From contig NC_092352.1 in the NCBI RefSeq assembly GCF_963676685.1, positions 77,314,001 through 77,378,000 of the forward strand: a stretch of DNA of 64,000 nucleotides. The letters run 5' to 3'. Each line of letters opens with the position of its first letter. The stretch's first letter is position 1. The stretch comes from Mytilus edulis. Taxonomy: Eukaryota. The translations under genes and the position numbers were made by a program. The notes under the pieces were generated by a model. It was not told the origin of the DNA. It saw nothing but the letters and a program-made list of their open reading frames with translations, and made no database searches. This document shows positions 10,645 through 57,344 of this stretch, one piece after another.

Positions 10645-12742
10645 ATAAAATTGAGAATGGAAACGGGGAATGTGTCAAAGATACAACAACCCGACCATAG
10701 AAAAAACAACAGCAGAAGGTCACCAACAGGTCTTCAATGTGGCGAGAAATTCCCGCACACGGAGGCTCCCTCAGCTGGCCCCTAAACAAATATATACTAG
10801 TACAGTGATAATGAACGACATTCTAATTTCCAAATTGTACACAAAAAACTAAAATTAAAATAATACGAGACTAACAAAGGCCAGAGGCTCCTGACTTGGG
10901 ACAGGCGCAAACATGCAGCGGGGTTAAACATGTTTAAGAAATCTCAACCCTCCCAATATACCTCTAGCCAATATAGAAAAGTAAACGCATAACAATACAC
11001 ACATTTAAAATTCAGTTCAAGAGAAGTCCGAGTCTGATGTCAGAAGATGTAACCAAAGAAAATAAACAAAATGACAATAATACATAAATAACAACAGACT
11101 ACTAGCAGTTAACTGACATGCCAGCTCCAGACTTCAATTAAACTGATTGAAAGATTATGATTTCATCACATCAATATCAGGCACAATCCTTCCCGTTAGG
11201 GTTTTAGTATCATTCCATCATAACATATATGAGAAGAACATTATAAGTTCAACAGGATAAATTTCTTTAGTAAACATACTGAAGTCGTCAATATTGAGAG
11301 CCAAAATATCATCCAAATATCTAAAAGTATTATTAAATTTGTTTATCAGATGTTGTTTCGATGGGTCTTTGCTGATTTTTGTCATAAATTGTAACTCATA
11401 GCAATACAAAAACAGGTCCGCAATAAGTGGGTCACAGTTAGTCTTCATTGGAATTCCGATAACCTGACGATATACGGAAACTCAAAAGCGAACACAAATG
11501 CTATCTAGTAAAATTTCAAGGGTATACATAGTATCAAAGCATGTCCAATTGACATAGTTTTTTTTGTTTATTGCTACTGAAAAATGACCTAAAAGAGTTT
11601 GAACATATTTATTCACATTCTGACTTTTTAAATGCCCATTTAATTAGGTGTGTGATTTTTTTCTGAATGAGAATGTGAGGCAATGTGGTATACAGGGTAG
11701 AAAAATCAAAACTTTGAACAGATTCAAAATCACCAATATAAGCATGCAATTTATCAAGTACTTCCAACGAGTTCTTGACACACCAAACGAAGTTAATTCC
11801 ACTATTTTCGAAGGCCTCAATATCAGGTTTTTGATTGTACCAAGTGTACTGGTAAGGAGAATAAACAATTTAGTAGTGGAACAATGGCTTGAAGACGAAA
11901 TAAATCTATATTTGTAAGGTGTTTTGTGTAGCTTCGGAAGCCAGTACATAGTTGGGACTTTCATTGTATTTGGTTCTGCTTGTAAAGCGGTAGCTAAAAG
12001 TTTATGTTTGTTATGTTATGTCGTTTTCTGAAAATGGAGTCAGTTGGAATGTTGGTGAATTTGTAATTTCTTTTTTCAGAACCTGAATGTAAAATTTAGA
12101 AAAAAAAAAGAGTCCAACGATTTTTAGTCAGATTTTCCCCATTTTATCCATTTCATACAGTAAGTACGGAGAGAGTCGTGGATGATATTACGACACTCAT
12201 TCCAATTAATAATTGACAGTGGACGATATTTAGTCCTTTACTGAGGAATGATTTTGACTCCCGGTCTTGAACGATGTTAAGATCTCCTGTTATAACATGG
12301 GAAATGGGTCCATAAATGTATTCGGAATTATAACATCTTTACACAATTGGTTATAATTAAACACAAATTTTCGGGTAGATTTCTTGTAAATATAGCAAAT
12401 AAGAGGGAGCTCAGTATTGTCAAAATATCCAGGAATTTGTTCTTTAACAGAATGGTCGTTAAATATACCGGCAATATTTACAAAATCAAAACCTTTATTG
12501 ACATACTTTACTTTAATAAAATGTTTTTTATGATCTTCAGGGCGATCAATTTTAGGAAATAGTTTAGAATAACAATATTCCATAATAATTTGAACTATTT
12601 CATACTTAGGACTGCTATATGAAATTGTGTTGCAATCCTCTAAAATTTTATTTAACCTATTAACCGTAAATGAACAAAGCTTTGTTAACAGATAATGTCT
12701 GCCGTTGTTTTTTGAAATAGAAATTAAGTCCGAAATATTGGT
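10645..12742 (-). mobile_element. Penelope-like element family 1, degenerate 5'-truncated copy
   Basis: YWLPKLHKTPYKYRFI, PLIADLFLYCYE, FRYLDD; internal deletion; empty site gtaataaataccaacc at ~23211. Confidence 0.85.
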
Positions 12743-16125: not shown

Positions 16126-17561
16126 ATAAAATTGAGAAAGGAAATGGTGAATATGTCAAAGCGACAACCCCCCGACCATAGAGCAAACAACAGCCGAAGG
16201 CAACCAATGGGTCTTCAATGTAGCGAGAATTCCCGCACCCGTAGGTGTCCTTCAGCTGGCCCCTAAAATATGCATAATAGTACAGTGATAATGGACGTCA
16301 TACTAAACTCCGAATTATACACAAGAAACTAAAATTTAAAATCATACAAGACTAACAAAGGCCAGAGGCTCCTGACTTGGGACAGGCGCAAAATTGCGGC
16401 GGGGTTAAACATGTTTATGAGATCTCAACCCTCCCCCTATACCTCTAGCCAATGTAGAAAAGTAAAACAATAACAATACGCACATTAAAATTCAGTTAAA
16501 GAGAAGTCCGAGTCTGATGTCAAAAGATGTAACAAAAGAAAATAAATAAAATGACAATAATACATAAATAACAACAGACTACTAGCAGTTAACTGACATG
16601 CCAGCTCCAGACCTCAATTAAACTGATTGAAAGATTATGTCTTCATCATATGAATATCAGGTACAATCCCTCCCGTTAGGGGTTTAGTATCATACTATCA
16701 TAAAATATATGAGAAGAACATAACCCGTGTCATGCCAACAACTGTTTTTTTTAAGAAATAAATGTGTTTAGTTCCGATGCAAAGACCCTATCAGTGAATC
16801 AATGTTAAAGCCAAAATATGCAATCTTTAATGACCTGACAACAGTATCGTAACTATATCCCCTTTTAATAAGTCTATTTAAAGGTTTTGTTAGTTTCTGA
16901 GGAGAATATTGACATTTTTGTGCTTTATAAAGAATATTTCCATAAAATTTTGGATGTGAAATACCTGAACGTATAAGATGTCTGCATGTTGAGTTATATT
17001 TACGAATTATTTCCTTATACCGGTGATAAAATTTAGTAAATGTTTTGACCAGTTTGTGATATCGAAAACCCTGGTGTAATAATTTTTCAGTAATACATAA
17101 ATTTCTCTCGCTAAAATCTAATACATTGTTACATACACGAGCGAATCGTACAAGTTGAGATATATAAACACCATAAGATGGTGACAAGGGAACGTCACCA
17201 TCTAAAAATGGATAATTAACAATAGGAAATGAAAAATCATCTCTTTTATCATATATTTTTGTATTAAGCTTCCCGTTTATGATATAGATATCAAGATCGA
17301 GGAAAGGGCAGTGGTCATTGTTTTCATTAGCTTTATTTAAAGTAAGTTCTACAGGATAAATTTCTTTAGTATACATACTGAAGTCGTCATTATTTAGAGC
17401 CAATATATCATCCAAATATCTAAAAGTATTGTTAAATTTTTGTATCAAATGTTGTTTTGATGGGTCTTTGCTAATTTTAGTCATAAATTGTAACTCATAA
17501 CAATACAAAAACAGGTCCGCAATAAGTGGTGCACAGTTAGTCCCCATTGGAATTCCAATAA
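16126..17561 (-). mobile_element. Penelope-like element family 1, young 5'-truncated copy; RT C-half ORF 16768-17561, no C-terminal GIY-YIG
   Basis: GIPMGTNCAPLIADLFL, RYLDD, PFLDL, YDKRDDF and YGVYISQLVRFARVC are uninterrupted; empty site at ~41785-41800. Confidence 0.92.
16360..16450 (-). ncRNA. Candidate type-P5 twister ribozyme in the PLE 3' UTR
   Basis: GGCUAGAGGU-AUA-GGGG-G-A-GGG...UAA-CCCC-GC-CGCA(AUUU)UGCG-CCUG-UCCCAAGU-CAGG-A-GCCUCUGGCC; P2, P3, P4, P5, T1 and T2 all pair. Confidence 0.8.
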
Positions 17562-17624
17562 TTGCTATCATATACAGATATGAACACTAAGTCTTATAAT
17601 GGTACTTAATATTGGCTTTAAATT

Positions 17625-20600
17625 ATTTAGACATTCAATAAAGTCAAATATTACATATGATGTAGCTCTCTTTTTTTAATTGGTGCTTACGATCTCGTGA
17701 TTCAGAGGGGATTTAAGTACATTGACGCTATGTTTCTATCTATATATATGTATTGACGGTCAATATTAATTATTTTTCACAATGCAATGAAACTACACAC
17801 TAAGGGCATTGAAACCCATTTCCAAAATACACTATTTGCATATGTAATATAAAAAGTAAGGCATTTTACTCTAAACGTTATATTTGGACCTGCTATATCA
17901 TAATGACCCTAGGACTTCATCCACGGTCAATATAATATGAATAAGGCGATATATAACGTATTTTGATCGCCAGATGTCCAGTATTGAAAAAATGTACAAA
18001 ACACACCTAGTAGACTGTATCTTTCACCGGGGAAAATATTCTGTCAATAACTTCTATTAACAACTGTTATACAAGTTGGGGATCTCATTAGCTATAAAAC
18101 CATGTTTAAACACTTATTTTCCTCGGAAAATGCCTGTACCAAGTCAGGAATATGGCGACTGTTTTTGACTTGTTTCTTTGGTTAATAAGGTTTAGTTTTT
18201 ATGGACTACCCTTTCTAAAAAGGCATTGGAGATAAGTATTTGTGAAATAACTAGAAAAAACACTTAAGCGCGGTTTGAAGACTACATGAAATATTTAATG
18301 TGATAGACAGCTTGGGTTCGTTTTCTCTCAGACTGTTTTTATGCACTGATGCATTATGCTAAAAGTTTTGATTTGTTTTTTAGTTCTTATTTCATAGGAG
18401 TTTGAATGTCCAAATAATAGCTTCTATCTTGGTGTAACACAGATGCTAGCGCTCATAGACGGACGGAATAACTTAGAGAAGACGAAGACAACCTCGAACA
18501 CTGATGATTAAACATTTCTCAATGGTGTTAGTTTGTAATAATTCTTGATTTTTACCAAAGGTGCAAGTCGAGTTCTGTCTGTGTCACTGTCTGTTACGGG
18601 TGCTCCAAGAACGAAGGAAACAACTAAGAGAAGGCAATCTAGAACTCTCTGAAGATTTAAAACATTTCTCGATTGGTACACGTTTTAGTTTATTTTTTTG
18701 AGTTGTGCGAGCTCTGCCTATGTGTGACACGGGTGCTCCGAGAATCAGAGAAAGAAGGACTTTACGAATAGATGAAGAAAACAAGACAATGATCAAACAC
18801 ATTTGAGTTTGTTATAATTTGTTTAGTGGTGCGGGTTTGATTAAGTGATGCAAGTTGTAATACATAGTGAGACTGTTTGAGTGTTGCGGATTGGCAGTGG
18901 GACGGGTTGTCATAGATTCAAGACGAATTGAATACAAAACCATTTCCGCCTGCTTTCAAAACGAAGAAGGCAAGGAGCCAGATACGCTAATATATCCTTT
19001 ACTATATGAAGAAATAAAGAAAATTACAGACACTTACTATTTTATTTTATATCATACGTCAGACGACCAACGACTCGGTGACAAAACTGCTAAAAAAGTT
19101 TCTTCAAATTTAATAAGATCGATTGTTTTCCATTGGCTATTTATTTGTAATATTTTTGTTCGTTTTTTTTCAAATCCGTTCATTACATTGAACAGCCTCA
19201 TAAGTCTAACCAGTTTTTTCAAATACATATATTTTGTTTAATCTGTACCAGGATCAATTTATTTATGTACAGAAATGTCAGGATTTGTTTGAATGTTTAT
19301 TGAATTAGTGATTATCGACGATGACGGATGAAGGATGGACGAACGATGAGAATAGCTCTACCTTAACGGGCAGAATGCTTTGTTTTACCTGTTTGAAGCA
19401 TATATGATGTCCTAAATTCAAAGGTCAATACGTACTTACAATGTACAGTGAACTTGAGGTTAAAAAAACTACCGAAATTGACAGTCTATTCTTTAAAATT
19501 CTATTTGGAACTTTGCCTCGATATTGACAAAAATAAATGCCTTCAAACTGAAATTATGGAATACAAAATCATCGAATATAGGGTTTATAATTTGGTACGC
19601 TAGAATTATTATACCACAAAATAATAGTTCGTCACATCCGATTTTAATCATATAGCTTGGTAGTCTCAGAGCATCATTCTTTTTGATTTCGTGTTTCGAT
19701 TAAATGTATTGGAAAATTGAAGTGACATAGTTTCTAAAGAAGGTAATCAAAAAAGGCGCGAACAATTGATTGGTTAACTTCCGGTTATGGATATTATCTA
19801 ATATGCAGTTAAGTTGTACGTGATATTGACACTGAAGAACGAACTAGACATGATAACACATTACTCATGTCTACTATTTCCTTATTTGAAACAAAGATAC
19901 ATTCTGCACAATATTTTGAAAGTTCTAAATTAACAAAGACTAACAGAAAACAAAATGATGATATTACTCCTACAAACGAAGTTGTAGAGTATAAAAATCA
20001 AACATTCTGAAAAGTAGTTGCATATATGACTTTGGTGATCTATGTCCGGGGGGTATAACAATCTTAATGTTTCGAACCATTAATAACCTTGTATAAACAA
20101 TGAGTTTACAGAAAACAAAAAAGTGCCTACTACATGACATATGATATCATTGAGCTGAGGGGCGAAACGTCCACCAGGACAATTAATATAAACTTTGACC
20201 CACTGGTTTTAAAAACTCATTTAACATATACAGATTATTTCAAGTACCATTTCTTTTTTAATTTTCAGCAGTAACATACCCTCTGTTCCATCGTATGGTG
20301 TTTACATATCTCAGCTTATTCGTTACGCTGATGCATTTTTACAATGTACGGTCTTTAAAACAAGAGTGTGCTCCTACCACGAAATCTGCGTTGACGGAGT
20401 TATGTGAAAAGAACAATTGAATATAGTACAGAAATTGCAAGGTCATGAACTGGTTGTCAGACACACTGTGTCGATGTCGTAACTCATTAGCTCCATGTTT
20501 TCTTGATATTCACTCTTAAGATACCATTAAAGTCGTCTGATCTGTAATTGTACCGATTGTGACGTCTATCGTAATGAATCAGATGACAAAACCAGGTTAT

Positions 20601-22320
20601 TTTGTTTCTGTGTGTGTTACTTTTTAGTGTTGTGTCGTTGTGTTGTGTTTCCCTTGGTTTTAGTTTTGTAACCTGGACTTTTTTTTCTCAAGCGATATAT
20701 GAATTTCAAACAGCGGTATACATGTACGACTGTTGCCTTTATTTACCCTATCGAAGCACCAAGTCTCGGTCCGGATCCTCTTGTCGTTCATGCGATTCCT
20801 TTAGATTTGCATCATATATCGGTCCGGATCCTCTTGCAATTCATGAAATTACTTCAGATTTTTTTTCTTAATTCCTCTCAACCAATCGGCTTATGAGATT
20901 TGAACAATCATGGTTAATTGCTGTCGCTTTCCAATTTACATTTTTTAACCATGTGTTGTACGTTGTTGCTCGTTGTTGTCTGTACGTGAGTTCTTTTGAA
21001 GATATGAGAAGCTGGTGGTTGATGTGATAAGTTATTTTATAACAAATTTTCTTTGGACGAATGGCAGAACTTACAATGTGTATGGCAACACTGCCGTTTG
21101 CATAAGAGCTATCAACGGAAATTCAACTTAAATTGATCAGCCAATGACAGAACCACAATCACAGCGTTATTTAAGACACATACCTAGCGATTACTCTCAA
21201 ATAGTAAATTCGTTTTAGTTTAAACATATTTATTCATCATCAACACAAATATATCATCATACAAAATACACAATAATAATAGGATTCGGAAACAAGCTAT
21301 ATTTAGCTTATATTAGTCCGTTTCCTTGAAATACCAACTCCAGTTAACTATTACATAAATATAGCATGCAATGTTACTATGATATGGAACAAAAATAAAC
21401 TAAGTAACTATATAACAAAAAAAAGAAAGGAGAAAAAAACTCATTTTAAAATAAGGAAAATAAATACAACCAAAGAAGAAAAAAAAGAAAACTACACCAA
21501 AATACTACACACATGTTTAGATGAAATGCAACTTAGGTGAGAATAGTGAATAACAATTTAACTTGTAAATCTCTTGCACTTTAGTATTAATTTGACCTAC
21601 ATGACCTACTGGTACAATTAGTAATGCATTTGTGTTATTCAATCTTTCCCTGTTTTGTGTTATATCTCGTCTCACTCTTTCAACGTTCACCGCCTTTGAT
21701 AAGTATTTAGTATGATATTCACTTCTGTTCTCGTACTATGAACAACTAATTCCTTTATTCAAAATAAAACAAATCCGTAGTCAATGTATTCCTTATTATA
21801 AGATTATAACATTTATCTCAATATTTGTATAGCTAGTTTCGCCTTATATAATTAATGATATAACTGTTCTTAAAACAACACTTACATTACTTTAATAGTT
21901 GATGAAAAATTTAGAAACGTTCAACATATCTAACTTGAACGGCTGTTGAATTAGTCATATCCAAAACTGTATTGTTCTTCAGACATTTACAACGAAGATA
22001 TTGACGGTACTTCTTGATCCGTAAGACATAGATAACTAGATCTATTACAGGATTTAACAACAGAAAAATGTTGTTGAAGATGATTGTGAGAGTACCTGTT
22101 AAAGCAGATTTGTTCCCCATGTTATAATAGAACACACGAATACTTCGAGGTAGAACTGCCACTAAAGATACAGAAATTATCAAACCCAGTGTAACTGCAT
22201 TACTACGTGTTCTGATATCCTTAGCCTTCTTCTTGACGACCTGGCTCTCTGTCATTCTACTTCCGTGAACCAAACTTTGCGAACGAATCATCCTATATAC
22301 TACAACACCGTAACAGGAAA
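17625..22320 (+). repeat. Near-identical direct segmental duplicate of ~41860-46640
   Basis: Line-by-line identity, including the duplicated 72-aa and 89-aa spurious ORFs. Confidence 0.95.
20266..20745 (+). mobile_element. Penelope-like family 3 degenerate 3' end (duplicate at ~44497-45055)
   Basis: SSNIPSVPSYGVYISQLIRYA. Confidence 0.7.
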
Positions 22321-28575: not shown

Positions 28576-30100
28576 GTTAGTAGTCTATGTCTTAAGTGCT
28601 CCATCCAATGCTAAGGTTAGTAGTCTATCCCTTAAGTGCTCCATCCAATGCTAAGGTTAGTAGTCTATGCCTTAAGTGCTCCATCACATACTCAGGCTAG
28701 TTGTATATGCCTTAAGTGCTCCATCACATGCTCTGGTTTGTAGTATATGCCTTAAGTGCTCCATCACATGCTCTGGTTTGTAGTATATGCCTTAATGCTC
28801 CATCACATGCTCAACCTTAGTAGTATAAACCTTAAGTGCTCCATCACATGCTTAGGTTAGTAGTCTATGCCTTTAGAGCTCCAGTTCATGGTCAGCTTAG
28901 TAGTCTATGCCTTTAGTGCGCCAGCACATGCTCAACTTAGTAGTCTATGCCTCAAATGCTCTATCTCATTCTCAGGTTAGTAGTATTATTATGTCTTAAG
29001 TGCTCCAACATAGGCCCAAGTTAGTAGTATATGCTTTAAGTGCTCCATGACATTCTCAGATTATTAGTCTATGCATTAAGTACTCCATTGAATGCTCAGC
29101 TTAGTAGTCTTTGTCTTAAGTGCTCCATCACATGCTTTGTTTTGTTGTATATACCTTAAGTGTTCATCACATGTTGAGGTTAGAAGTCTATGCCTTAAGT
29201 GTTCATTACATGATCAGGCTAGTTGTCTATGTCTTAAGTGCTCCATCAAAAGCTCAGGCTAGTTGTTTATGTCTTAACTGCTTCATCAAATGCCCAGCTT
29301 AGTAGACTATGCATAAAGTGCTTAATCACATACTCAGCTTAGTAGTCTATGCCTTAAACGTCCATGACATCCTCAGATTATTAGTCTATGCTTTAAATGT
29401 CATCTAATGCTCAGGCTAGTAGTGTTTGCCTTACGTGCTTCATCAAATGCTCACATTAGAAGTCTACGCTTTAAGTGCTCCATCACATGCTCAGGTTAGT
29501 AGTATATGCCTTAAGTTCTCCATGACTTCCTCAGATTATTAGTCTATGCATTAAAAGCCTATCACATGCTCAGGCTAGTTGTATATGTCTTAGACATGCT
29601 CATGTTAGTAGTATATGCCTTAAGTGCTCATCACATGCTCAGGCTAGTTGTTTATGTTTTAAGTGCTCCATGACATGCTCAGGTTAGTAGTATATGCCTT
29701 AAGTGCTCCATCACATGCTCTGGTTTGTAGTGTATGCCTTAAGTGATCCATCACATGCTCAGCTTTAGTGGTCTATGCCTTAAGTGCTCCATCACATTCT
29801 CAGGTTAGTAGTCTATGCCTTTAGTGCTCCAGCAAATACTCAGCTTAGTAGTCTATGCCTTAAGTGCCTCATCAGCTTAGTAGTCTATGCCTCAAGTGCT
29901 CTACCTTATGCTCATGTTAGTAGTCTATGCCTTAAGTGCTCCTGCACAGGCTCAAGTTAGTAGTATATGCCTTAAATGCTCAATGACTTCCTCAGATTAT
30001 TAGTCTATGTATTAAGTGCTCATCACATGCTCAGGCTAGTTGTCTATGTCTTAGACATGCTCATGTTAGTACTCTATGCTTAAAATGCTCCAGCACATGA
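28540..30100 (+). repeat. 40-bp tandem satellite (~39 units) derived from the exon end plus splice donor
   Basis: Unit gttagtagtctatgccttaagtgctccatcacatgctcag; aggttag at 28574, 28614 and 28654. Confidence 0.95.
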
Positions 30101-31419
30101 AGGTTTTTATTTATCCATTAAACCAGGTTCAACCCATCATTTTTTCTTAAAATTTCCTGTAACAAGTCAGACATATGACAGTTGTTATCGAAAAGGTCCT
30201 CTCTATGTCAGAGGTCTTTTTTCTTCACTTCAGAGTTCCTGTTGTTCGTTTGTTTTCCTTTTATAGTTATGTGTTTTTATCGGGTTTTTTATTTTGTTAA
30301 CCGGATTTGTTTACTCGCGATTGATTTATGACCTTAGAACACTGAACGATATAATTGTATTATCTGGGCAACTCTAGTTAACTGATGTTTAAATGTCATA
30401 AACAAATTCGGGAGAAGTAAATCAGGACATAGGAAAACGGATGGAATCACATGAAATCCAAATTGAGCGAGACCGGGTGCGCCATCAGCATAAGCGTCTC
30501 ATGCGCTTTAGGTAATATCAAATGGGGGATAACGGTGGCGTGTGATCTATGACAAAGTGTTTTGTAAATTTAGACACCTGGGTTAAAGATCAACCAATTT
30601 GTGATGGCAACCAAATAACGAGCGGATTTCAGTCGTTCTTCTATAAAAAATGTTTCTGGATTTGCTTCAAAGTTCGGCGCTTTCGTTTGACATTCGATTT
30701 TGCAATTATTTTTCAAAGTCAAATTCTCATCTTAACATGAATATTTATTGTTATTTCAGAGTTAGTACTCCGTGTATATCCATAGTTCACATAAGTTTTT
30801 CTATGTTTCTTTTTCTTGCTTTTGTAATATGTTTCCTTCCATAATAACATTTTATAATTATTAACTTTTGCGTTTATAACAATAATAACAACGTGTTCAT
30901 GGATATAACAGTTTTATGGGTAAATTTTGTTAATAATGCTCGATCAAATGAATCAACAACAAATTGAAGCTTTTAATGACCTTGACTGGCTATACAACCC
31001 TAGCACGGCCGGTATGAATGATAAATTTTACAAAGCTGTTTAGTAATAAGCAAACAGAGCTAGTAAATTATAACGATTCGTTACTTTTTCAAGTTCATTG
31101 TTAACTCTGTAAATGATTCCAGTCTCGCATCTTTTTAAGATCTTGCTATTCCCCTTGTTTTAGTTTGTGATATTGATGTGTATTCTCCGTAACTATTCAT
31201 TATATTTGAGTGTTTGTAAACTAATGTTCTATTGAATATAGATGCACAACTGAGCAGTTTGATACACATTGGTGTTTAAATTTACCATTTGTTTACGTTT
31301 ACCTGTTTGATGTTGATGTTGATGTTGAATGAGGTAAAACACGATGCACAATCGAAACTTAAAATCACGATGTTTATACATTTGGTAATTTGTATATAAT
31401 GTTATATGTTCTTGATTTT

Positions 31420-33660: not shown

Positions 33661-36127
33661 ACTTTATAAAACAAAATAACCGAACTCCAAATAAAATTCA
33701 AATCGTAAAGCCACTTATCAAGTGACAAAATCAAAAGCACAAATACATCAAAAATATTGAAAACACCTGTCATATTCCTGACCAGGTACAGACATTTTCT
33801 TGTGTAGAAAATGGTGGTTTAAACCTGGTTTTATAGCTAGCTAAATATCTAACGTGTATGGCAGTCACATACAACTATGTAAATATAACTTAATGACATA
33901 ACAATGCTTAAATTCTGAAATTCAAATTTTGCAAACAAGCCAAATATAACCGAGTTATGGTTACAAAGAAAATATTTTTTGTGGATTTTGTTATATGTGC
34001 AAAATTGATTTGATTAACCTATTTTCATTAGACGACAATAACCTTAGCAACAGAGTTCGGTCATTGTGGCCTCAGATGTCTAGATCATGTCGATGTTGAA
34101 AGAGATTTTAGCCGGAGATCTATATATTGGATTAATGTATTTTTTAAATATATTTGTTTTGAAAAATTTCTTGTTTACTCATAGATAAAAACTGTAATTG
34201 TTCTATTTCAAAGATGTTGATACAGAGGCAAATTAGAAATGCCGGGTAAAGTTGGTATATGTACAAATTATCAGGTTGTCTGCATATTGATATTGTAAAA
34301 TATCAGTTTCGAGTCGCATTATGAAGCTTTTTGTCGAGTGAGCGCACCGAACGAGTTCAAAAATCCTTCATTATGTGTCGAGCAGTTGACAGTTTACATT
34401 ATCTTACTTCCTATACTTTTCTAGGAATATGATAGGTGAAAAGGGTCCGCGTGGAGACCGTGTATGTTCCATATTAGGTGTGGAGGGAGACTTATTTCAA
34501 TACCGGTTACGACTTTGGCCCAATTTGATTATTTAAATGTATTGAAAGTTCTGCTGACTATTGTTATATCTAAGTTGTTGATATTCAATTGTTGACATTA
34601 CGTTTTTGTGCAGACCAATGGAAGTAGGTTCTTACAATGTAACACTTGAACACTTTAATATCAAGATAAGAAGATTTGTATGATTGAAAATGAGACAACT
34701 CTTGTCTAAATTTAACAAATAAAAATAGTCGGCAAGATAAATTCGTTACATAGTGTATGTGCTAGTGACAAAATACGATATATATATATACGCTTTGCTC
34801 TCATCCTATATTGAATTCACTGACCCCGTATATATGTCGTATTAGGTAACTAACGCACTATGTGACTGCTAATATCATTATGCAGATAACCTGATAATCG
34901 TTTTATCGGGCTGTATTTGCGTCTTTTTGAAGTGTTTTCATTGTTTCGTCAGCAAACCAGAAGATGACTTGATTCGAGTCAATCTTATCAACGTCAGTTT
35001 AAACATTGTGACGTCGCTGATACGTACGGCTCAAAGTTAATGAGGCCGGGTCAATGTATTTGACGTCGCAAAGCCGTGATATGCAATTTTATTACAAGAG
35101 CTGAGCTGAGTGATATAGACAGTTGGACGACCGATAAAAAACTAATGGTATCAAATACATCATGGTTTTTTTTGTCAACACTGCAAGAATGCAATTTTTG
35201 TTTGTAGAATATATCTAATATCTAATATTCATCTGATATCTGATATACATTTAATAACTAAAACCATCTGGTATCTAATTAATATCTGATATCCAATAAA
35301 CATCTTTTTATACTAAGTATCTTAAGGATGTCAATAAGTAAAGTGAACGGACAAGAAGTGGCCTTATCGACCATCCCCTCCATGAACAGGTTTGAATTCA
35401 CGCTACACTCACTCAAAATGTTAATAAGAATTAATGCATTTTCATTAAGATATTTCGAGTAACTTTTATAAATAAACCTTGCAGTTATTTTCCAGAAAAA
35501 AACCGAACTGAAAGTTCTGAACCTTAGATTATGAATGTCTTTATGTTTTTTAGTTTAAGAAGTAAACTTTAATTATAAATTTTACTTTGTCTTTGGTTTT
35601 TTTCACAATTTTTTATGACTACCCGTATTTTTGTTTGTATTTGTTTTATTGTACATTGTATTTTCTACCCATACGCTAATTAAATGCTTACACGCATTTC
35701 AAAATTTTATGCCGACGTAATAGTTTTTACGTATCAAACACTATAAAAGTGTTATCATCACTGCCTGATCGATATCCTTGCTATTGTAAATACGTTAATG
35801 TCCGTTTCTTCTACTTGTCTTTTTCATTACCTTTTTTTACCTTTGGATTAATATGGTTATGGCTTCATCAAAGACATTGAATTCTAAAAAAAATGGAACG
35901 TGTGATTTCTTTATTCTAAATTAAAGACAACAATAAATATCATACTAACCTACTAATAATCTAAACATACTGAGTCTATCTAGAGTTTTAAGCCAGGTAT
36001 ACCTGCAAATACTGTTTGAATATATTTGAATTATTGAAAGACAACACGTATACATCTTTACATAGTTGATGAAACATTGTGAAACGTTCAACATTTGTTT
36101 CACTGATATAAAGTTAACCTGGACATT

Positions 36128-37290: not shown

Positions 37291-37834
37291 GTACAACTAT
37301 TGTATCTAATAAATATATGAAAAGGTTCACGCAATTAATATCAGCTATTATATACCTTAACTCCTCATGAATATTAATTAAACAAGTTGTTTTATAGACT
37401 ACATATATAGCTACATGAGTTATAATGTATTCTTTATTCTGAGTGGGTCTTTGGATGACCTTAATCTAATCACATCTTATTTTAACATTTAATGAGAAAC
37501 ATTAAGCTAAGGTAAACGAACTGTTATAACCACGCAAATACGAAAGCAAACAGTCCAATATTGTCTCAATATTGGTAAATGAACTGTTATAAACACAAAA
37601 GAGGCGCAAAAAATAACAGATGGACTATAAATCTCATAGATCTACTAAAAAATACCCAAAAGATGTAGATTGTTCGACTCCTTGTTGATGTGTAGATTGA
37701 CTAAGCTGAATTAGGCATACCTTTTCGGATTTTGAGCTATAAATGCTCGTTTTCTTAGTAGTATTAAAAAGATTCGACTTAAATACCACTGATGAATCAA
37801 TTATGGACTAAACGTGCTGAATAAATAGCTTTTG

Positions 37835-38134
37835 AGATCTCATAAACATGTTTAACCCCGCCGCAATTTTGCGCCTGTCCCAAGTCAGGAGCCTCTGGCC
37901 TTTGTTAGTCTTGTATGATTTTAAATTTTAGTTTCTTGTGTATAATTCGGAGTTTAGTATGACGTCCATTATCACTGTACTATTATGCATATTTTAGGGG
38001 CCAGCTGAAGGACACCTACGGGTGCGGGAATTCTCGCTACATTGAAGACCCATTGGTTGCCTTCGGCTGTTGTTTGCTCTATGGTCGGGTGGTTGTCGCT
38101 TTGACATATTCACCATTTCCTTTCTCAATTTTAT
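37835..38134 (+). mobile_element. Penelope-like family 1, 300-bp 3'-end insertion
   Basis: Near-identical reverse complement of 16126-16425; tttg duplicated at the ends; empty site at ~13761. Confidence 0.88.
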
Positions 38135-40868: not shown

Positions 40869-43800
40869 TATCAAACTGATATTTCACACATATTTTTTTT
40901 GCAAATATGGCTTTTATGCATCTCTAGTCATATATCAACCAAATTATGTCAGATATATAGTAAAGATGATATTTTTGTGACAAAAATTCTTCACTGCCAT
41001 TTGAGGCCAAAATTGTGAACTTTTAAAGATAAATAGGCATAGAGTACGATTCAATACTATCTGCTTTTTGCATTCGAAACCTGTAAATAATAAAATTTAT
41101 TGCTGTGACTTAGTATTGTTATCATTTGTTTGAGCATACTACAAATTTGAAAATATATTGACAAAGTCACAGACCCGAAATTTCATGTTGGTCGATTTGC
41201 GAACCTTATAATTGATTTGCGACATAAGAAGACGAATGCGATTTGAGTTTCAACCCGTATACACTACCGTACCCGTAAAATAAGGCATTGTTTTAAAGCA
41301 CAAGATTTTTCTTCTAAATATAGATATTTCAATTTCACAGGGATTAGTCAACTTAAATACAAAATATTTTCCCCCTTCTTTTTAAGACGGTTATATTCCT
41401 TTGTCCCCTTCTTAAAAGTATGCAGTTCAACGACTCGCTTGCTATGCCCGTGTCTATTATACGTAATACGTGTATTCAATACCCGATGAATTTAAAAGTT
41501 TTATTTACGTTAGTACTATATCTCTTAACATGTACTACATTATTTTTTATAGAAAAAAATATTTTGTAGTAAAGCTTTGTTCTGCATGGGAAATCGGATT
41601 TTATATCACATCCTTACAATAATTTTGTTTAAAGAGCCCGAAATATTCAATACGATTTATTTACATGTATTCATCATTAAATTGTTTTTTTGAAATGTTA
41701 TCAATGTAACACCTTAGGTATGTCAGGTTTGACGATTCTTTTCTCCGTTTTAACAATTAAAGAAATATAAAGGATTTTATATATATCTAAATATATATTG
41801 CTATCATATACAGATATGAACACTAAGTCATAGTATGGTACTTAGTATTGACTAGAAATTATTTAGACATTCAATAAAGTCAAATATTACATATGATGTA
41901 GCTCTCTTTTTTTAATTGATGCTTACGATCTCGTGATTCAGAGGGGATTTAAGTACATTGACGCTATGTTTCTATCTATATATATTGACGGTCAATATTT
42001 ATTATTTTTCACAATGCAATGAAACTACACACTAAGGGCATTGAAACCCATTTCCAAAATACACTATTTGCATATGTAATATAAAAAGTAAGGCATTTTA
42101 CTCTAAACGATATATATGGACCTGCTATATCATAATGACCCTAGGACTTCATCCTCGGTCAATATAATATGAATAAGGCGATATATAACGTATTTTGATC
42201 GCCAGATGTCCAGTATTGAAAAAATGTACAAAACACACCTAGTAGACTGTATCTTTCACCGGGGAAAATATTCTGTCAATAACTTCTATTAACAACTGTT
42301 ATACAAGTTGGGGATCTCATTAGCTATAAAACCATGATTAAACACTTATTTTCCTCGGAAAATGCCTGTACCAAGACAGGAATATGGCGACTGTTTTTGA
42401 CTTGTTTCTTTGGTTAATAAGGTTTAGTTTTTATGGACTACCCTTTCTAAAAAGGCATTGGAGATCAGTATTTGTGAAATAATTAGAAAAAACACTTTAG
42501 CGCGGTTTGAAGACTACATGAAATATTTAATGTGATAGACAGCTTGGGTTCGTTTTCTCTCAGACTGTTTTTATGCACTGATGCATTATGCTGAAAGTTT
42601 TGATTTGTTTTTTAGTTCTTATTTCATAGGAGTTTGAATGTCCAAATAATAGCTTCTATCTTGGTGTAACACAGATGCTAGCGCTCATAGACGGACGGAA
42701 TAACTTAGAGAAGACGAAGACAACCTCGCACACTGATGATTAAACATTTCTCAATGGTGTTAGTTTGTAATAATTCTTTATTTTTACCAAAGGTGCAAGT
42801 CGAGTTCTGTCTGTGTCACTGTCTGTTACGGGTGCTCCAAGACCGAAGGAAACAACTAAGAGAAGGCAATCTAGAACTCTCTGAAGATTTAAAACATTTC
42901 TCGATTGGTACACGTTTTAGTTTATTTTTTTGAGTTGTGCGAGCTCTGCCTATGTGTGACACGGGTGCTCCGAGAATCAGAGAAAGAAGGACTTTACGAA
43001 TAGATGAAGAAAACAAGACAATGATCAAACACATTTGAGTTTGTTATAATTTGTTTAGTGGTGCGGGTTTGATTAAGTGATGCAAGTTGTAATACATAGT
43101 GAGACTGTTTGAGTGTTGCGGATTGGCAGTGGGACGGGTTGTCATAGATTCAAGACGAATTGAATACAAAACCATTTCCGCCTGCTTTCAAAACGAAGAA
43201 GGCAAGGAGCCAGATACGCTAATATATCCTTTACTATATGAAGAAATAAAGAAAATTACAGACACTTACTATTTTATTTTATATCATAGTCAGACGACCA
43301 ACGACTCGGTGACAAAACTGCTAAAAAAGTTTCTTCAAATTTAATAAGATCGATTGTTTTCCATTGGCTATTTATTTGTAATATTTTTGTTCGTTTTTTT
43401 TCAAATCCGTTCATTACATTGAACAGCCTCATAAGTCTAACCAGTCTTTTCAAATACATATATTTTGTTTAATCTGTACCAGGATCAATTTATTTATTTA
43501 CAGAAATGTCAGGATTTGTTTGAATGTTTATTGAATTAGTGATAATCGACGATGACGGATGAAGGATGGACGAACGATGAGAATAGCTCCACCTTAACGG
43601 GCAGAATGCTTTGTTTTACCTGTATGAAGCATATATGATGTCCTAAATTCAAAGCTCAATACGTACTTACAATGTACAGTGAACTTGAGGTTAAAAAAAC
43701 TACCGAAATTGACAGTCTATTCTTTAAAATTCTATTTGGAACTTTGCCTCGATATTGACAAAAATAAATGCCTTCAAACTGAAATTATGGAATACAAAAT

Positions 43801-46227
43801 CATCGAATATAGGGTTTATAATTTGGTACGCTAGAATTATTATACCACAAAATAATAGTTCGTCACATCCGATTTTAATCATATAGCTTGGTAGTCTCAG
43901 AGCATCATTCTTTTTTATTTCGTGTTTCGATTAAATGTATTGGAAAATTGAAGTGACATAGTTTCTAAAGAAGGTAATCAAAAAAGGCGCGAACAATTGA
44001 TTGGTTAACTTCCGGTTATGGATATTATCTAATATGCAGTTAAGTTGTACGTGATATTGACACTGAAGAACGAACTAGACATGATAACACATTACTCATG
44101 TCTACTATTTCCTTATTTGAAACAAAGATACACTCTGCACAATATTTTGAAAGTTCTAAATTAACAAAGACTAACAGAAAAAACAAAATGATGATATTAC
44201 TCCTACAAACGAAGTTGTAGAGTATAAAAATCGAACATTCTGAAAAGTAGTTGCATATATGACTTTGGTGATCTATGTCCGGGGGTATAACAATCTTAAT
44301 GTTTCGAACCATTAATAACCTTGTATAAACAATGAGTTTACAGAAAACAAAAAAGTGCCTACTACATGACATATGATATCATTGAGCTGAGGGGCGAAAC
44401 GTCCACCAGGACAATTAATATAAACTTTGACCCACTGGTTTTAAAAACTCATTTAACATATACAGATTATTTCAAGTACCATTTCTTTTTTAATTTTCAG
44501 CAGTAACATACCCTCTGTTCCATCGTATGGTGTTTACATATCTCAGCTTATTCGTTACGCTGATGCATTTTTACAATGTACGGTCTTTAAAACAAGAGTG
44601 TGCTCCTACCACGAAATCTGCGTTGACGGAGTTATGTGAAAAGAACAATTGAATATAGTACAGAAATTGCAAGGTCATGAACTGGTTGTCAGACACACTG
44701 TGTCGATGTCGTAACTCATTAGCTCCATGTTTTCTTGATATTCACTCTTAAGATACCATTAAAGTTGTCTGATCTGTAATTGTACCGATTGTGACGTCTA
44801 TCGTAATGAATCAGATGACAAAACCAGGTTCAACCCACCATTTTTTTTTCTTAAAATGTCTGGTACCAAGTCAGGAACATTGCCATTGTTATAATATATA
44901 ATTTATATTTTGTTTCTGTGTGTGTTACTTTTTAGTGTTGTGTCGTTGTGTTGTGTTTCCCTTAGTTCTAGTTTTGTAACCTGGATTTTTTTTTCTCAAG
45001 CGATATATGAATTTCAAACAGCGGTATACATGTACGACTGTTGCCTTTATTTACCCTATCGAAGCACCAAGTCTCGGTCCGGATCCTCTTGTCGTGCATG
45101 CGATTCCTTTAGATTTGCATCATATATCGGTCCGGATCCTCTTACAATTCATGAAATTACTTCAGATTTTTCTTCTTAATTCCTCTCAACCAATCGGCTT
45201 ATGAGATTTGAACAATCATGGTTAATTGCTGTCGCTTTCCAATTTACATTTTTTAACCACGTGTTGTACGTTGTTGCTCGTTGTTGTCTGTACGTGAGTT
45301 CTTTTGAAGATATGAGAAGCTGGTGGTTGATGTGATAAGTTATTTTATAACAAATTTTCTTTGGACGAATGGCAGAACTTACAATGTGTATGGCAACACT
45401 GCCGTTTGCATAAGAGCTATCAACGGAAATTCAACTTAAATTGATCAGCCAATGACAGAACCACAATCACAGCGTTATTTAAGACACATACCTAGCGATT
45501 ACTCTCAAATAGTAAATTCGTTTTAGTTTAAACATATTTATTCATCATCAACACAAATATATCATCATACAAAATACACAATAAAAATAGGATTCGGAAA
45601 CAAGCTATATATAGCTTATATTAGTCCGTTTCCTTGAAATACCAACTCCAGTTAACTATTACATAAATATAGCATGCAATGTTACTATGATATGGAACAA
45701 AAATAAACTAAGTAACTATATAACAAAAAAAAGAAAGGAGAAAAAAAACTCATTTTAAAATAATGAAAATAAATACAACCAAAGAAGAAAAAAAAGAAAA
45801 CTACACCGAAATACTACACACATGTTTAGATGAAATGCAACTTAGGTGAGAATAGTGAATAATAATTTAACTTGTAAATCTCTTGCACTTTAGTATTAAT
45901 TTGACCTACATGACCTAATGGTACAATTAGTAATGCATTTGTGTTATTCAATCTTTCCCTGTTTTGAGTTATATCTCGTCTCACTCTTTCAACGTTAACC
46001 GCCTTTGATAAGTATTTAGTATGACGATTGATATTCACTTCTGTTCTCGTACTATGAACAACTAATTCCTTTATTCAAAATAAAAAAAAATCCGTAGTCA
46101 ATGTATTCCTTATTATAAGATTATAACATTTATCTCAATATTTGTATAGCTAGTTTCGCCTTATATAATTAATGATATAACTGTTCTTAAAACAACACTT
46201 ACATTACTTTAATAGTTGATGAAAAAT

Positions 46228-52980: not shown

Positions 52981-53510
52981 AAATAAAGGCAACAGTAGTA
53001 TACCGCTGTTCAAACTCATAAATCCATGGACAAAAAACAAAATCTGGGTAACAAACTAAAACTGAGGGAAACGCATTAAATGTAAGAGGAGAACAATGAA
53101 ACAACACTACAATGTAACACACACAGAAACGGACCAAGCAACAGACAACATCCCACGAGAATAACAAATATAACATCAAAACCAAATACATGAATCTGGG
53201 ATAGAAAAGTACCGTGACACGTCTTATCGAAATGTGAATTTACACTCAAAATTAAGAGAAAACAAACGACGCAACGTTAAAATGTAACACAAACGGAAAC
53301 GAACTATAATATAACAATGGCCATATTCCTGCCTTGGTACAGGACATTTTTAAAGAAAAAAATGGCGGGTTGAACCTGGTTTTGTGGCATGCCAAACCTC
53401 CCCTTTTATAGCCATGTGAAATATAACATTACGATGACAACTCAACACCACAGGACTACAATATAAATAAATTGGAGAATACAATTGACAAAGAAACACA
53501 CGAACAACAG
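52981..53510 (-). mobile_element. Retroelement 3' UTR (probably Penelope-like family 3) containing a variant twister-like fold at 53317-53415
   Basis: Shares its 3' end with 20600-20745 and 22964-23123. Confidence 0.7.
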
Positions 53511-55536: not shown

Positions 55537-56530
55537 ATATTCCGGGTTCTATAGTCATTATTATCGTTACGATATGATATTCAATAAGTGTGATTGCCCA
55601 TGCAGAACCAATATTCCATACCCAAAACTTTTATATGCAAAATATAATTCAGTAAATGTTAAGAGAAAGAGTGGTGTTGAAAACCAAAGTTATAATACAC
55701 CAAGTATAAACATATCGTTGTTCCATAAAGACACGTACAAAACAAGCAAGTCGTGGCCTACTCATGTATTTGGAATGGATCCATGAAACATAACCGTCTC
55801 AAAAAGAAAATAAGTAATCGATATTTTGTTTCAAATTTTAGTATGGAGTATTCTGTGTATTGAGGACCCAAAATTCCAAAAGCTTGTGTTACATACGGCT
55901 AAAGTAAATAAAGGCTACAGTAGTATATCGAAAGTCACCAATTGACGAAGAGAAACAAATCTAGGTTACAAACTAAAACTGATGTAAAACCATTACCTAT
56001 AAGAGAAAACAATGAAATAACAGAAACACTGAGGTGCAGCAAAAAACCAAAACGACTATGTAAGACACACAGAAACGAAATATAAGATACCATTAGCCAT
56101 TTTCTTGACGTGGAACAGGACACTTTAAGAAAAAATGGTGGGTTCAACCTGGTTTTGCTGCAATCAAACCTCGCGCGTTTAGGACACTATTTAATATGAA
56201 ACTAAAATGACCACATTATAGGACAAATAAATGCAAGACCACTGAGGACAGAGAAATACACAAATAAACATTTCATTATGATATTTCGACATCAAAGGTA
56301 CGAGGCTTATAATTTAATACACCATACTTGCGTTTCGTCTACACAAGACTCACAAAATATAAATGAAAGCCAAACAAGTACGAAGTTGAAGAGCATTGAT
56401 GACACAAAATTCTAAAAAGTTGTGTCAAATACGTTTAAGTTTTTCTTTGCCTGGGATAAGAACATCCTTAGTATTTAGAATAATTCTTACTTTTGCAAAC
56501 AGTACATTTAAAAAAAAATGACCATATATA

Positions 56531-56949
56531 AAAAAAAAAAAAAGAAGATGTGGTATGATTGCCAATGAGACAACTATCCACAAAAGACCAAAATGACACA
56601 GACATTAACAACTATAGGTCAACGTACGGTCTTCAACAATGAGCAAATCCCATACCGCATAGTCAGTTATAAAAGGCCCCGATAAGACAATGTAAAACAA
56701 TTCAAACGAGAAAACTAACGGCCTTATTTATGTAAAAAAAATGAACGAAAAACAAATATGTAACACATAAACATATAAACAAACGACAACCACTGAATTA
56801 CAGGCTCCTGACTTGGGACAGGCACATACATAAATAATGTGGCGGGGTTAAACATGTTAGCGGGATCCCAACCCTCCCCCTAACCTGGGACAGTGGTATA
56901 ACAGTACAACATAAGAACGAATTATAAAAATCAGTTGAAAAAGGCTTAA
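56531..56949 (-). mobile_element. Retroelement 3'-end insertion, TSD catatata
   Basis: catatata at 56523-56530 and 56950-56957; same family as 24150-24360. Confidence 0.8.
56789..56897 (-). ncRNA. Candidate type-P5 twister ribozyme, second family
   Basis: CAGGU-UA-GGGG-G-A-GGG...UAA-CCCC-GC-CACAU..AUGUG-CCUG-UCCCAAGU-CAGG-A-GCCUG; P3 and P5 differ in sequence from 16360-16450 yet still pair. Confidence 0.8.
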
Positions 56950-57344
56950 CATATATATTTGATGTTCATGTCAACACTGAAGTGGTGACTAACCACCGAA
57001 TGAAAACGAACACGTAAAACAAATGCCTGGGATAATTTTTTCTAAAAATTCAAGTTTTGTAAACAGGCAATTTATAAAAATGACCATATGATAGATATTC
57101 ATGTCAACACCGAAGTGCTGACTAATGGGCTGGTGATACGCACTCGGGAACATGCGGATCAGCATCCGCTGAACTAGCAGACCTTACAATGTTTGTTATT
57201 CTTGAAAACATTTTACAACGCTTTAAACATAGACACAAAATGATTATGATTTCCAGATTGAGGGATGACGGCTGGATCATATGTAGGACTCGGAACCGCG
57301 TTGGTACTCTGAACCGCGATGGTCGCGCTGAAGTAAGATAGTCC

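What the first reader, a model, noticed from the sequence alone, without database searches (positions are those of the whole stretch)
16360..16450. Circularly permuted (type-P5) twister ribozyme in the 3' UTR of a Penelope-like retroelement
Seen: on the element's sense strand, ~320 nt after the RT stop, the sequence maps onto the twister consensus. It has L1 UAA, P2 CCCC/GGGG, T2 GC/GU, a P3 hairpin, P4 CCUG/CAGG, L4 UCCCAAGU, G-A-GGG (putative general-base G and T1) and a 10-bp closing P5. An otherwise dissimilar retroelement tail at 56789-56897 keeps the same core while P3 and P5 change compensatorily. Known: PLEs are classically associated with hammerheads, and eukaryotic twisters are reported near other non-LTR elements. 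Inference: a twister-equipped PLE lineage, with predicted cleavage between 16407/16406 and 56850/56849. I am not aware of a description in mussel PLEs but cannot check.
Basis: partly seen in the sequence, partly recalled or inferred. Interest (0 to 1): 0.9.

Follow-up and report, generated by a model that had tools for sequence, protein, structure and literature searches.

The report
Twister-like ribozyme in mussel Naiad retroelements
A 91-base RNA motif with every core feature of the twister self-cleaving ribozyme sits in the 3' untranslated region of a Naiad-type Penelope-like retroelement, a clade reported to lack ribozymes, and in related short repeats, tens of thousands of copies in all; cleavage itself is untested.

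Summary
Window 16450-16360(-) and 56897-56789(-) carry P5, P2, the G-A-GGG strand, U|AA, the T2 GC, P3 and the P4/L4 hairpin in type-P5 twister order. Rfam Twister-P5 aligns end to end but below its cut-off (23.4 and 21.3 bits; cut-off 37.6).

The host element is a Naiad-clade Penelope-like element. Full copies are 4,031-bp head-to-tail units with an N-terminal GIY-YIG, CxC and DKA motifs, a C-terminal reverse transcriptase, in-frame TGA codons and a SECIS. No hammerhead was found. The window copy is a 5'-truncated insertion with a precise empty site.

The motif occurs more than 10,700 times exactly. Relatives with a variant L4 occur about 18,000 times, in at least six repeat families.

- Helices P5 and P3 differ between families but stay paired.
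- Pseudoknot T1 switches CCC/GGG to ACC/GGU.
- Between two Naiad lineages the core is 91.5% identical against 60-65% in the flanks, and all four stem changes are compensatory.

There is no canonical P1. A self-complementary 8-10-mer replaces it. No excess of copies starts at the predicted cut, and no RNA data could be obtained.

Verdict: probably a genuine twister in a new host, activity unproven. First-stage readers of this scan flagged the same motif in other windows of this genome.

The parts
16360..16450 (-). Type-P5 twister-like motif (family A). P5 16450-16441 with 16369-16360; P2 16437-16434 with 16404-16401; G16433-A16432; T1 16431-16429 with L4 C16381-16379; predicted cut U16407|A16406; T2 16400-16399 with G16376-U16375; P3 16397-16388; P4/L4 16386-16371.
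   Evidence: Sequence. RF02684 aligns end to end at 23.4 bits. The nested minimum-energy fold forms P5, P3 and P4, z = -3.2. Own model R1 scores 102 bits.
16418..16427 (-). Palindrome 1 (UGAGAUCUCA), one base after T1, where P1 should be. It is self-complementary in all ten lineages compared, with nine different sequences.
   Evidence: Monomer hairpin 0 to -1.5 kcal/mol; homodimer -12 to -20 kcal/mol.
16406..16417 (-). Palindrome 2 (UAAACAUGUUUA), which spans the predicted scissile bond. The CAUG centre becomes CUAG in lineage G, keeping the symmetry.
16127..17560 (-). 5'-truncated copy (about 1,434 of 4,031 bp) of a Naiad-type Penelope-like element. It is inserted in a TA-rich site, and the empty site lies at window about 41796.
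   Evidence: The 3' end is constant and the 5' ends vary among copies. Precise filled and empty junctions.
16771..17571 (-). Open frame for the C-terminal half of the reverse transcriptase (motifs GIPMGTNCAP and YLDD). The first three codons lie in flanking DNA.
   Evidence: Long relatives carry an N-terminal GIY-YIG; P0071 and P0125 also match RVT_1.
16647..16711 (-). SECIS element in the 3' UTR.
   Evidence: RF00031 at 30.9 bits, E 0.00046, below the gathering score of 35. Full-length copies have in-frame TGA codons.
16576..16608 (-). 33-nt 3' UTR block identical between two Naiad lineages whose UTRs are otherwise about 60-65% alike. It contains two further self-complementary stretches. Its function is unknown.
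56538..56950 (-). Family B: a discrete 413-bp non-autonomous element that starts right after a (TA)n run. Its first 60 nt and last 35 nt or so resemble the Naiad 3' UTR.
   Evidence: Five of seven copies share both ends. Tail and head similarity.
56789..56897 (-). Twister-like motif of family B. Same core, longer P3, a two-part P5, predicted cut U56850|A56849.
   Evidence: RF02684 at 21.3 bits. R1 at 131 bits. P5 duplex -17.8 kcal/mol, reached by none of 200 shuffles.
53304..53433 (-). Family C copy. P2 has 3 bp, T1 is ACC/GGU, C stands at -1, and palindrome 1 is UGGCAUGCCA.
   Evidence: No Rfam twister hit for this family.
10865..10985 (-). Older, mutated family A copy.
37832..37914 (+). Family A copy truncated inside the motif. 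It lacks the P5 5' strand, the P2 3' strand, the G-A and T1.
18045..18173 (+). Decayed copy of the C/D type. Further decayed copies lie at 42277-42405(+), 33751-33883(-), 56080-56206(-), 44773-44899(+) and 30068-30191(+).

Best explanation
The motif is a genuine circularly permuted (type-P5) twister ribozyme module. It is carried on the sense strand in the 3' UTR, and hence in the pseudo-LTR of tandem copies, of a selenoprotein-encoding Naiad-clade Penelope-like element. Non-autonomous relatives share it.

**Shown here**
- The twister core, P2, P4, T1 and T2 are all present.
- P3 and P5 sit where twister allows optional stems.
- The helices covary between families.
- The core is under purifying selection between Naiad lineages.
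- Full copies form 4,031-bp head-to-tail arrays with one motif per unit.

**Inferred**
- The RNA cuts itself between U16407 and A16406, with G16433 as general base and A16406 as general acid, as in solved twisters.
- On multimeric transcripts this would release unit-length RNAs. That is the role proposed for hammerheads in canonical Penelope-like elements, which Naiads are reported to lack.
- P1 is replaced by a self-complementary 10-mer that is too weak as a hairpin but strong as an intermolecular duplex. Cleavage may therefore be tuned by pairing of two copies, as in the dimeric hammerheads of Penelope-like elements.
For: **Match to the twister model**
- RF02684 aligns over positions 1-58 of 58, and every unpaired consensus base matches: GAGGG, UAA, GC, GUCCCAAG.
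- The only departures are a G.U pair in T2 and the missing P1. Both are reported as tolerated, and P1 as dispensable (PMC5408937; PMC11662667).

**Covariation between families**
- P5 is strong and differs in sequence in families A, G, B and C: -23.1, -14.2, -17.8 and -16.2 kcal/mol, each reached by none of 200 shuffles. Family D has an 8-bp P5, ACUGUCAU/AUGACAGU, read.
- T1 covaries. Pair 45-112 is GC in 15 rows and UA in 7. Over 52 distinct copies the combinations are CCC/GGG 23, ACC/GGU 20 and mismatched 9.
- T2 is G.U or A-U. P2 is CCCC/GGGG, CCC/GGG, CUUC/GGGG or UCC/..GA.
- Overall, 90.5% of cells are paired, against 29-57% when the partners are slid.

**Purifying selection**
- Between lineages A and G the core is 65/71 identical, against 59.5-65% in the flanking UTR.
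- The six differences are two compensatory pairs in the palindromes plus two loop or linker bases.

**Host and setting**
- Naiad features and tandem arrays.
- No hammerhead or other ribozyme family in a full unit.
- Naiads are reported to lack canonical hammerheads (PMC8557442).
Against: - The Rfam score is below the gathering cut-off, and the hit vanishes when more than about 220 bases are searched. From the E-value I estimate a handful of equally good chance hits in a 1.37-Gb genome.
- There is no canonical P1. A 21-24-nt insert lies between T1 and the cut site. The nested minimum-energy fold pairs GGGUU with AACCC instead of forming P2.
- Most integrated copies carry the motif uncut.
- Only 10 copies have non-matching bases immediately upstream of A+1, and 5 of those are real truncations there. 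A control position gives 3.
- The covariation in T1, T2 and P2 may reflect only one or two evolutionary events.
- Some subfamilies have mismatched T1 or P2.
- Family C gives no Rfam hit.
- A second, intact Naiad family in the same genome lacks the module.
- No RNA data were available.
Confidence: 0.65

Rival explanations
1. The region is a conserved structured domain of the Naiad 3' UTR. It may serve reverse-transcriptase recognition, RNA dimerisation or template switching. It is either descended from a twister or only resembles one, and it no longer cuts, or never cut, in vivo.
For: - Palindromes are a general feature of this UTR: palindromes 1 and 2, plus two more in the 33-nt conserved block.
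- There is no pile-up of copies starting at the predicted cut.
- Copies are integrated with the motif intact, including one with a precise empty site.
- Families with imperfect P2 or T1 still reached high copy number.
Against: A recognition domain has no reason to keep exactly the unpaired twister bases (G-A, AA, UNCCAAG, GC). Nor would it covary the two pseudoknot contacts that only the twister fold predicts. Hammerheads of canonical Penelope-like elements are likewise found intact inside integrated copies, so intact copies do not argue against activity.
Confidence: 0.25
2. The match is a chance resemblance to the twister consensus that was amplified because it happened to lie in a successful retroelement.
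For: The covariance-model score is sub-threshold, and the E-value implies a few chance hits per genome of this size.
Against: P5 and P3 are not scored by the Rfam model, yet they are present at the allowed places. The core is conserved across at least six families and between lineages whose flanks have diverged to 60-65% identity, with compensatory changes.
Confidence: 0.04
3. The ribozyme is active but has a different job. It would detach the last 281 nt, the reverse-transcriptase entry site, from the coding RNA. That would either limit retrotransposition of translated RNAs or create short tail RNAs that seed non-autonomous families.
For: - The cut lies 281-282 nt from the unit's 3' end.
- Short families B to F consist of little more than the motif plus a Naiad-like tail.
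Against: Family B starts about 100 nt upstream of the cut, not at it. Almost no copies start at A+1.
Confidence: 0.06

Closest known systems
Twister ribozyme, type P5 (Rfam RF02684, clan CL00120; Roth et al. 2014, as described in PMC5408937)
   Same: The order of strands, the U|AA site, the G-A-GGG strand, the L4 UCCCAAG loop, P2, P4, both pseudoknots, the optional P3, and the ends in P5.
   Different: There is no P1 helix next to the cut. An 8-10-nt palindrome plus a 10-12-nt insert stand in its place. T2 has a G.U pair. The score is below Rfam's cut-off. The motif is embedded in a 4-kb retroelement RNA at more than 10,000 copies.
Hammerhead ribozymes in the pseudo-LTRs of canonical Penelope-like elements, including the minimal variants that cleave as dimers (Cervera and de la Pena 2014, and Lunse et al. 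2017 from my own knowledge; PMC8557442, PMC7761336)
   Same: A small self-cleaving motif on the sense strand near the 3' end of a Penelope-like element, repeated once per unit in tandem copies. The helix next to the cut is reduced to a palindrome that can pair between two copies.
   Different: A different ribozyme class. The host is the Naiad clade, which was reported to lack canonical hammerheads. Dimer dependence here is only an inference.
Twister variants at the 5' end of the RTE-type element Perere-3 in Schistosoma mansoni (PMC8501958)
   Same: A twister-class ribozyme used by a retrotransposon without long terminal repeats. P1 is weak or supplied by context.
   Different: Those lie at the 5' end, and target-site duplications abut the cut, which shows processed templates. 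Here the motif is 3'-proximal and genomic copies do not start at the cut.
Naiad selenoprotein elements of clams and spiders (PMC8557442)
   Same: N-terminal GIY-YIG, CxC and DKA motifs, several in-frame UGA codons, a SECIS in the 3' UTR, TA-rich targets, and tandem copies.
   Different: That paper names clams and spiders, not mussels, and no ribozyme was reported there.

Membership tests
Twister ribozyme (type P5) | Score at or above Rfam's gathering threshold for RF02684 | tested here: not met
   23.4 and 21.3 bits against 37.6. Found only in 221-base searches.
Twister ribozyme (type P5) | Highly conserved unpaired bases: N|AA at the cut, G-A before T1, the L4 UCCCAAG loop, GC of T2 | tested here: met
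   All match the consensus line of the Rfam alignment. G-A, the A's that follow the cut (offset by one alignment column in families C and D) and the L4 AAG are kept in nearly all 26 rows of six families.
Twister ribozyme (type P5) | Helices P2 and P4 | tested here: met
   P4 cells are 98% paired and P2 cells 75% paired. P2 variants include CUUC/GGGG and a U-A pair.
Twister ribozyme (type P5) | Pseudoknots T1 and T2 supported by covariation | tested here: met
   T1 pair: GC 15, UA 7. T2 pair: GU 22, AU 2. CCC/GGG 23 and ACC/GGU 20 of 52 copies. Probably only one or two events, so the support is moderate.
Twister ribozyme (type P5) | P1 helix adjoining the cleavage site | tested here: not met
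   The bases after T1 and before U-1 are not complementary. A palindrome of 8-10 nt replaces P1. The literature says P1 is dispensable.
Twister ribozyme (type P5) | P5 as the closing helix | tested here: met
   Strong, family-specific duplexes. Formed in the minimum-energy fold.
Twister ribozyme (type P5) | Site-specific, Mg2+-dependent self-cleavage | not testable with these tools
Naiad clade of Penelope-like elements | N-terminal GIY-YIG endonuclease, C-terminal reverse transcriptase | tested here: met
   The two frame pieces of a full unit align collinearly with P0071 residues 105-524 and 526-940. P0071 has GIY-YIG and RVT_1 hits. The GIY-YIG motif can be read.
Naiad clade of Penelope-like elements | CxC motif, and DKA in place of DKG | tested here: met
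   SCNC and PADKAANN in the 424-residue piece. The criteria come from PMC8557442.
Naiad clade of Penelope-like elements | Partial tandem or pseudo-LTR arrangement and TA-rich targets | tested here: met
   4,031-bp units at 99.98% identity. Further 4,031-bp spacings. TA-rich insertion sites.
Naiad clade of Penelope-like elements | No canonical hammerhead | tested here: met
   An Rfam E-value scan of a full unit finds only the SECIS.
Retrozyme-like non-autonomous element (circular RNA by ribozyme cleavage and ligation) | Tandem short units that yield circular RNA | not tested
   One partial tandem of family B was seen in L017. No RNA data.

The most novel reading that the evidence does not exclude
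Naiad Penelope-like elements, thought to have dispensed with ribozymes, instead swapped the hammerhead for a twister. Its P1 is replaced by a palindrome, so that efficient cleavage needs two copies to pair, either on a tandem transcript or between two RNAs. This would be a convergent 'dimer-gated' design in two unrelated ribozyme classes serving the same retroelement group. With its non-autonomous relatives the module would be among the most abundant ribozyme families in any animal genome.
Probability: 0.3. Interest if true: 0.85.

Novelty: new variant of a known kind. Interest (0 to 1): 0.72.

Why it matters
Hammerheads are a hallmark of Penelope-like elements, yet their role is still unclear. 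The very successful Naiad clade was taken as evidence that these elements can do without a ribozyme (PMC8557442).

If Naiads of mussels carry a twister at the same place, ribozyme use would be a conserved requirement met by interchangeable catalysts. That makes the function testable by swapping or disabling the motif.

It would also be a second natural role for twister in retrotransposition, after Perere-3. It would give an annotation to tens of thousands of 'anonymous' bivalve repeats. And it would offer a P1-less, palindrome-bearing twister for studying folding and possible dimer control.

Tried and rejected
**Searches that gave nothing usable**
- A DNA search of the own genome with the 101-nt motif found nothing, not even itself, because its words are too common.
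- An RF02684 search of the own genome scored only 79 of 31,236 candidates and reported none.
- Pfam on the frame pieces taken apart gave nothing. Classification was done by BLASTP against P0071 instead.
- Rfam gave no twister hit for family C, nor for larger stretches.
- One literature search was wasted by a loose setting.
- No supplementary files are held for PMC11662667. I could not see whether this motif is in its bivalve list.

**Test for templates cut at U|A: negative**
- Ten copies have three non-matching bases immediately upstream of A+1, against 3 at a control position. Only 5 of the 10 are true truncations.

**Ideas I dropped**
- That family D lacks the G-A-GGN strand. A random sample of 20 showed that about 13 have it and the rest are 5'-truncated.
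- That several copies share the 5' end at 17561. That was an artefact of the query copy ending there.

**Restraint kept**
The frame pieces were searched apart.

Full report
**1. The observation**

Read on the minus strand, window 16450-16360 holds these elements in order:
- a 10-nt P5 5' strand
- AUA
- GGGG (P2 3' strand)
- G-A
- GGG (T1)
- a 21-nt insert
- U|AA
- CCCC (P2 5' strand)
- GCC (T2)
- a 10-nt P3 hairpin
- the hairpin CCUG-UCCCAAGU-CAGG (P4/L4)
- A
- the P5 3' strand

The reading frame upstream stops at 16768-16770, so the motif begins 317 nt after the stop. A second copy at 56897-56789(-) has the same core with a longer P3 and a different, two-part P5. The predicted cuts at 16407/16406 and 56850/56849 are the U|A steps.

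A whole-window Rfam scan at gathering thresholds finds nothing. Searches of 221 bases align Twister-P5 (RF02684) over all 58 model positions, at 23.4 bits (E 0.0046) and 21.3 bits (E 0.016). The gathering score is 37.6. Every unpaired consensus base matches.

The hit is lost again when 700 or more bases are searched. From the E-value I estimate a few equally good chance hits in a genome of this size. The covariance-model hit alone therefore proves nothing. The rest of the case rests on comparison between copies.

**2. Abundance**

- The pattern from UAACCCCGCC through the L4 hairpin has 10,707 exact matches in the 1.37-Gb assembly, against 0 for the reversed control.
- A looser pattern that also demands GAGG upstream gives 18,458 matches, with some copies counted twice.
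- The variant hairpin with L4 UACCAAGU has 18,069 exact matches.
- A model built from 26 copies finds 11 copies in this 64-kb window at E below 0.001.

**3. The host element**

All family A copies share a 3' end at window 16127 and differ in their 5' ends. The window copy spans 17560-16127 on the minus strand. It interrupts a TA-rich site that is uninterrupted in a paralogous stretch at about 41796, and both junctions are exact.

Its 267-residue frame is the C-terminal half of a reverse transcriptase. Long relatives have an N-terminal GIY-YIG, and P0071 and P0125 also match RVT_1.

In the genome the same frame is found at 99% identity in many places, often 4,031 bp apart. One such place (L053) is a head-to-tail array of 4,031-bp units that are 99.98% identical. 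Each unit has one motif, 360 nt after the stop and 281-282 nt before the unit's 3' end.

The frame of a unit has four to five in-frame TGA codons and no other stop before the final TAA. A GIY-YIG motif is readable near its start. Taken apart, its two long pieces align collinearly with P0071 residues 105-524 and 526-940. They show the CxC motif and the DKA motif that define Naiads (criteria in PMC8557442).

A SECIS lies at 16711-16647, at 30.9 bits against a gathering score of 35. A scan of a full unit finds no hammerhead or any other ribozyme family.

The element is thus a selenoprotein-type Naiad, the clade described as lacking canonical hammerheads. A second Naiad family with intact 1,000-residue frames in the same genome lacks the module. 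The module therefore marks a lineage, not all Naiads.

**4. Families and covariation**

I separated these families:
- **A**: the Naiad 3' UTR, with two subfamilies.
- **G**: a Naiad about 75% identical to A, found on a metagenome contig (L101).
- **B**: a discrete 413-bp element, window 56950-56538. It starts after a (TA)n run, and its head and tail resemble the Naiad UTR.
- **F**: about 18 old copies.
- **E**: one copy.
- **C**: at least 244 copies.
- **D**: the bulk of the 18,000 copies with L4 UACCAAGU.

What varies and what stays fixed:
- **P5.** It differs in sequence in A, G, B and C but is strongly paired in each, at -14 to -23 kcal/mol, reached by none of 200 shuffles. Family D has an 8-bp P5, ACUGUCAU/AUGACAGU, read.
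- **P3.** It is a different hairpin in each family.
- **Constant bases.** The G-A dinucleotide, the AA after the cut, the L4 AAG and the C-G pair of T2 are essentially constant.
- **T1.** It is CCC/GGG in A, B, E, F and G, and ACC/GGU in C and D. Alignment pair 45-112 is GC in 15 rows and UA in 7. Among 52 distinct copies the combinations are 23, 20 and 9 mismatched.
- **T2.** It is G.U, or A-U in C2 and D.
- **P2.** It is CCCC/GGGG, CCC/GGG, CUUC/GGGG or UCC with ..GA.
- **Overall.** 90.5% of cells pair, against 29-57% when the partners are slid by one to three columns.

These pseudoknot changes may be only one or two events. I count them as moderate support.

Stronger support comes from comparing the 3' UTRs of A and G. 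The 71 nt between the P5 strands are 91.5% identical, while the rest of the UTR is 59.5-65% identical. Of the six differences, four are two compensatory pairs inside the palindromes. The other two lie in a loop and a linker.

**5. P1 and the palindromes**

The bases after T1 and before U-1 cannot pair, so there is no canonical P1. One base after T1 every lineage has a self-complementary block of 8-10 nt. It occurs in nine different sequences, and one is symmetrical only through G.U pairs, which points to RNA rather than DNA.

As a hairpin the block is worth 0 to -1.5 kcal/mol. As a homodimer it is worth -12 to -20 kcal/mol.

A second palindrome spans the cut in A, E, F and G. Its centre changes from CAUG to CUAG in G.

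Published work says P1 is dispensable, and that inserts upstream of the cut and wobble pairs in the pseudoknots are tolerated (PMC5408937, PMC11662667). The missing P1 therefore does not exclude activity.

The resemblance to the dimer-dependent hammerheads of Penelope-like elements is my inference, not a result.

**6. Evidence sought for cleavage in vivo**

If cut RNAs were templates, copies should begin at A+1. Only 10 family A copies have three non-matching bases immediately upstream of A+1, against 3 at a control position. Only 5 of the 10 are true truncations; the rest are internal deletions or duplications.

Integrated copies, including the one with the empty site, carry the motif uncut. 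This is neutral to mildly negative, because hammerheads in canonical elements are also found intact inside copies.

No RNA reads could be examined.

**7. Literature**

- Twister variants process the 5' end of Perere-3 in Schistosoma (PMC8501958).
- A review mentions truncated twisters at the 5' ends of RTE elements (PMC7761336).
- A large survey lists bivalves among new groups with predicted twisters (PMC11662667), but its lists are not held.
- No paper in the library combines twister with Naiad. None of the 17 that mention both twister and Penelope-like elements has a title or abstract describing a twister in such an element.

**8. Verdict**

The motif is most likely a real twister module in a new host, Naiad Penelope-like elements and their short relatives. 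It has an unusual palindrome in place of P1. Catalysis and role remain to be shown.

Other first-stage notes of this scan describe the same motif in other windows of this genome. I checked their main points here independently.

Noticed in passing
L053 (G000:C4:74631000-74640999), minus strand; window 16647-16711(-): The Naiad frame has four to five in-frame TGA codons and no other stop. One falls where relative P0071 has the single residue between its two aligned segments (residue 525). A SECIS follows in the 3' UTR. This looks like a selenoprotein Naiad in a mussel; the published cases are from clams and spiders.
   Followed up: partly
window 16576-16608(-): A 33-nt block of the 3' UTR is identical between two Naiad lineages whose UTRs are otherwise about 60-65% alike. 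It contains a 12-nt stretch that is self-complementary with one G.U pair, and the palindrome AGUUAACU. Its function is unknown.
   Followed up: partly
L041-L052: A second Naiad family has many intact 1,000-residue frames without in-frame stops. It has no twister-like module in the 1.4 kb after its stop codon.
   Followed up: partly
L022:1540-2123: A 583-bp insertion sits exactly in the TTAA that spans the predicted cut site, with TTAA on both sides. This is as expected for a piggyBac-type DNA transposon target and is unrelated to the ribozyme.
   Followed up: no
window 17561-21498 and 41797-45807: Two copies of a repeat of about 4 kb are 98.7% identical, while the DNA beyond them is only 75-85% alike. 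One copy abuts the Naiad insertion. The repeat itself holds a decayed module of the C/D type on the other strand.
   Followed up: no
window 56879-56893(-): In family B the 5' strand of P5 (CUGUCCCAGGUUAGG) resembles the P4/L4 hairpin sequence. This may be a trace of an internal duplication.
   Followed up: no
L017:1235-1790: Family B is found as a partial tandem: the 3' part of one unit is followed directly by a unit that starts inside the motif. This is typical of insertions of Penelope-like elements.
   Followed up: no
L094-L106 (metagenome contigs): Marine metagenome assemblies hold near-identical family A copies, so they contain mussel DNA. One contig (L101, BCSF01012017.1) carries a Naiad about 75% identical to A, with its own P5 and palindromes.
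   Followed up: partly
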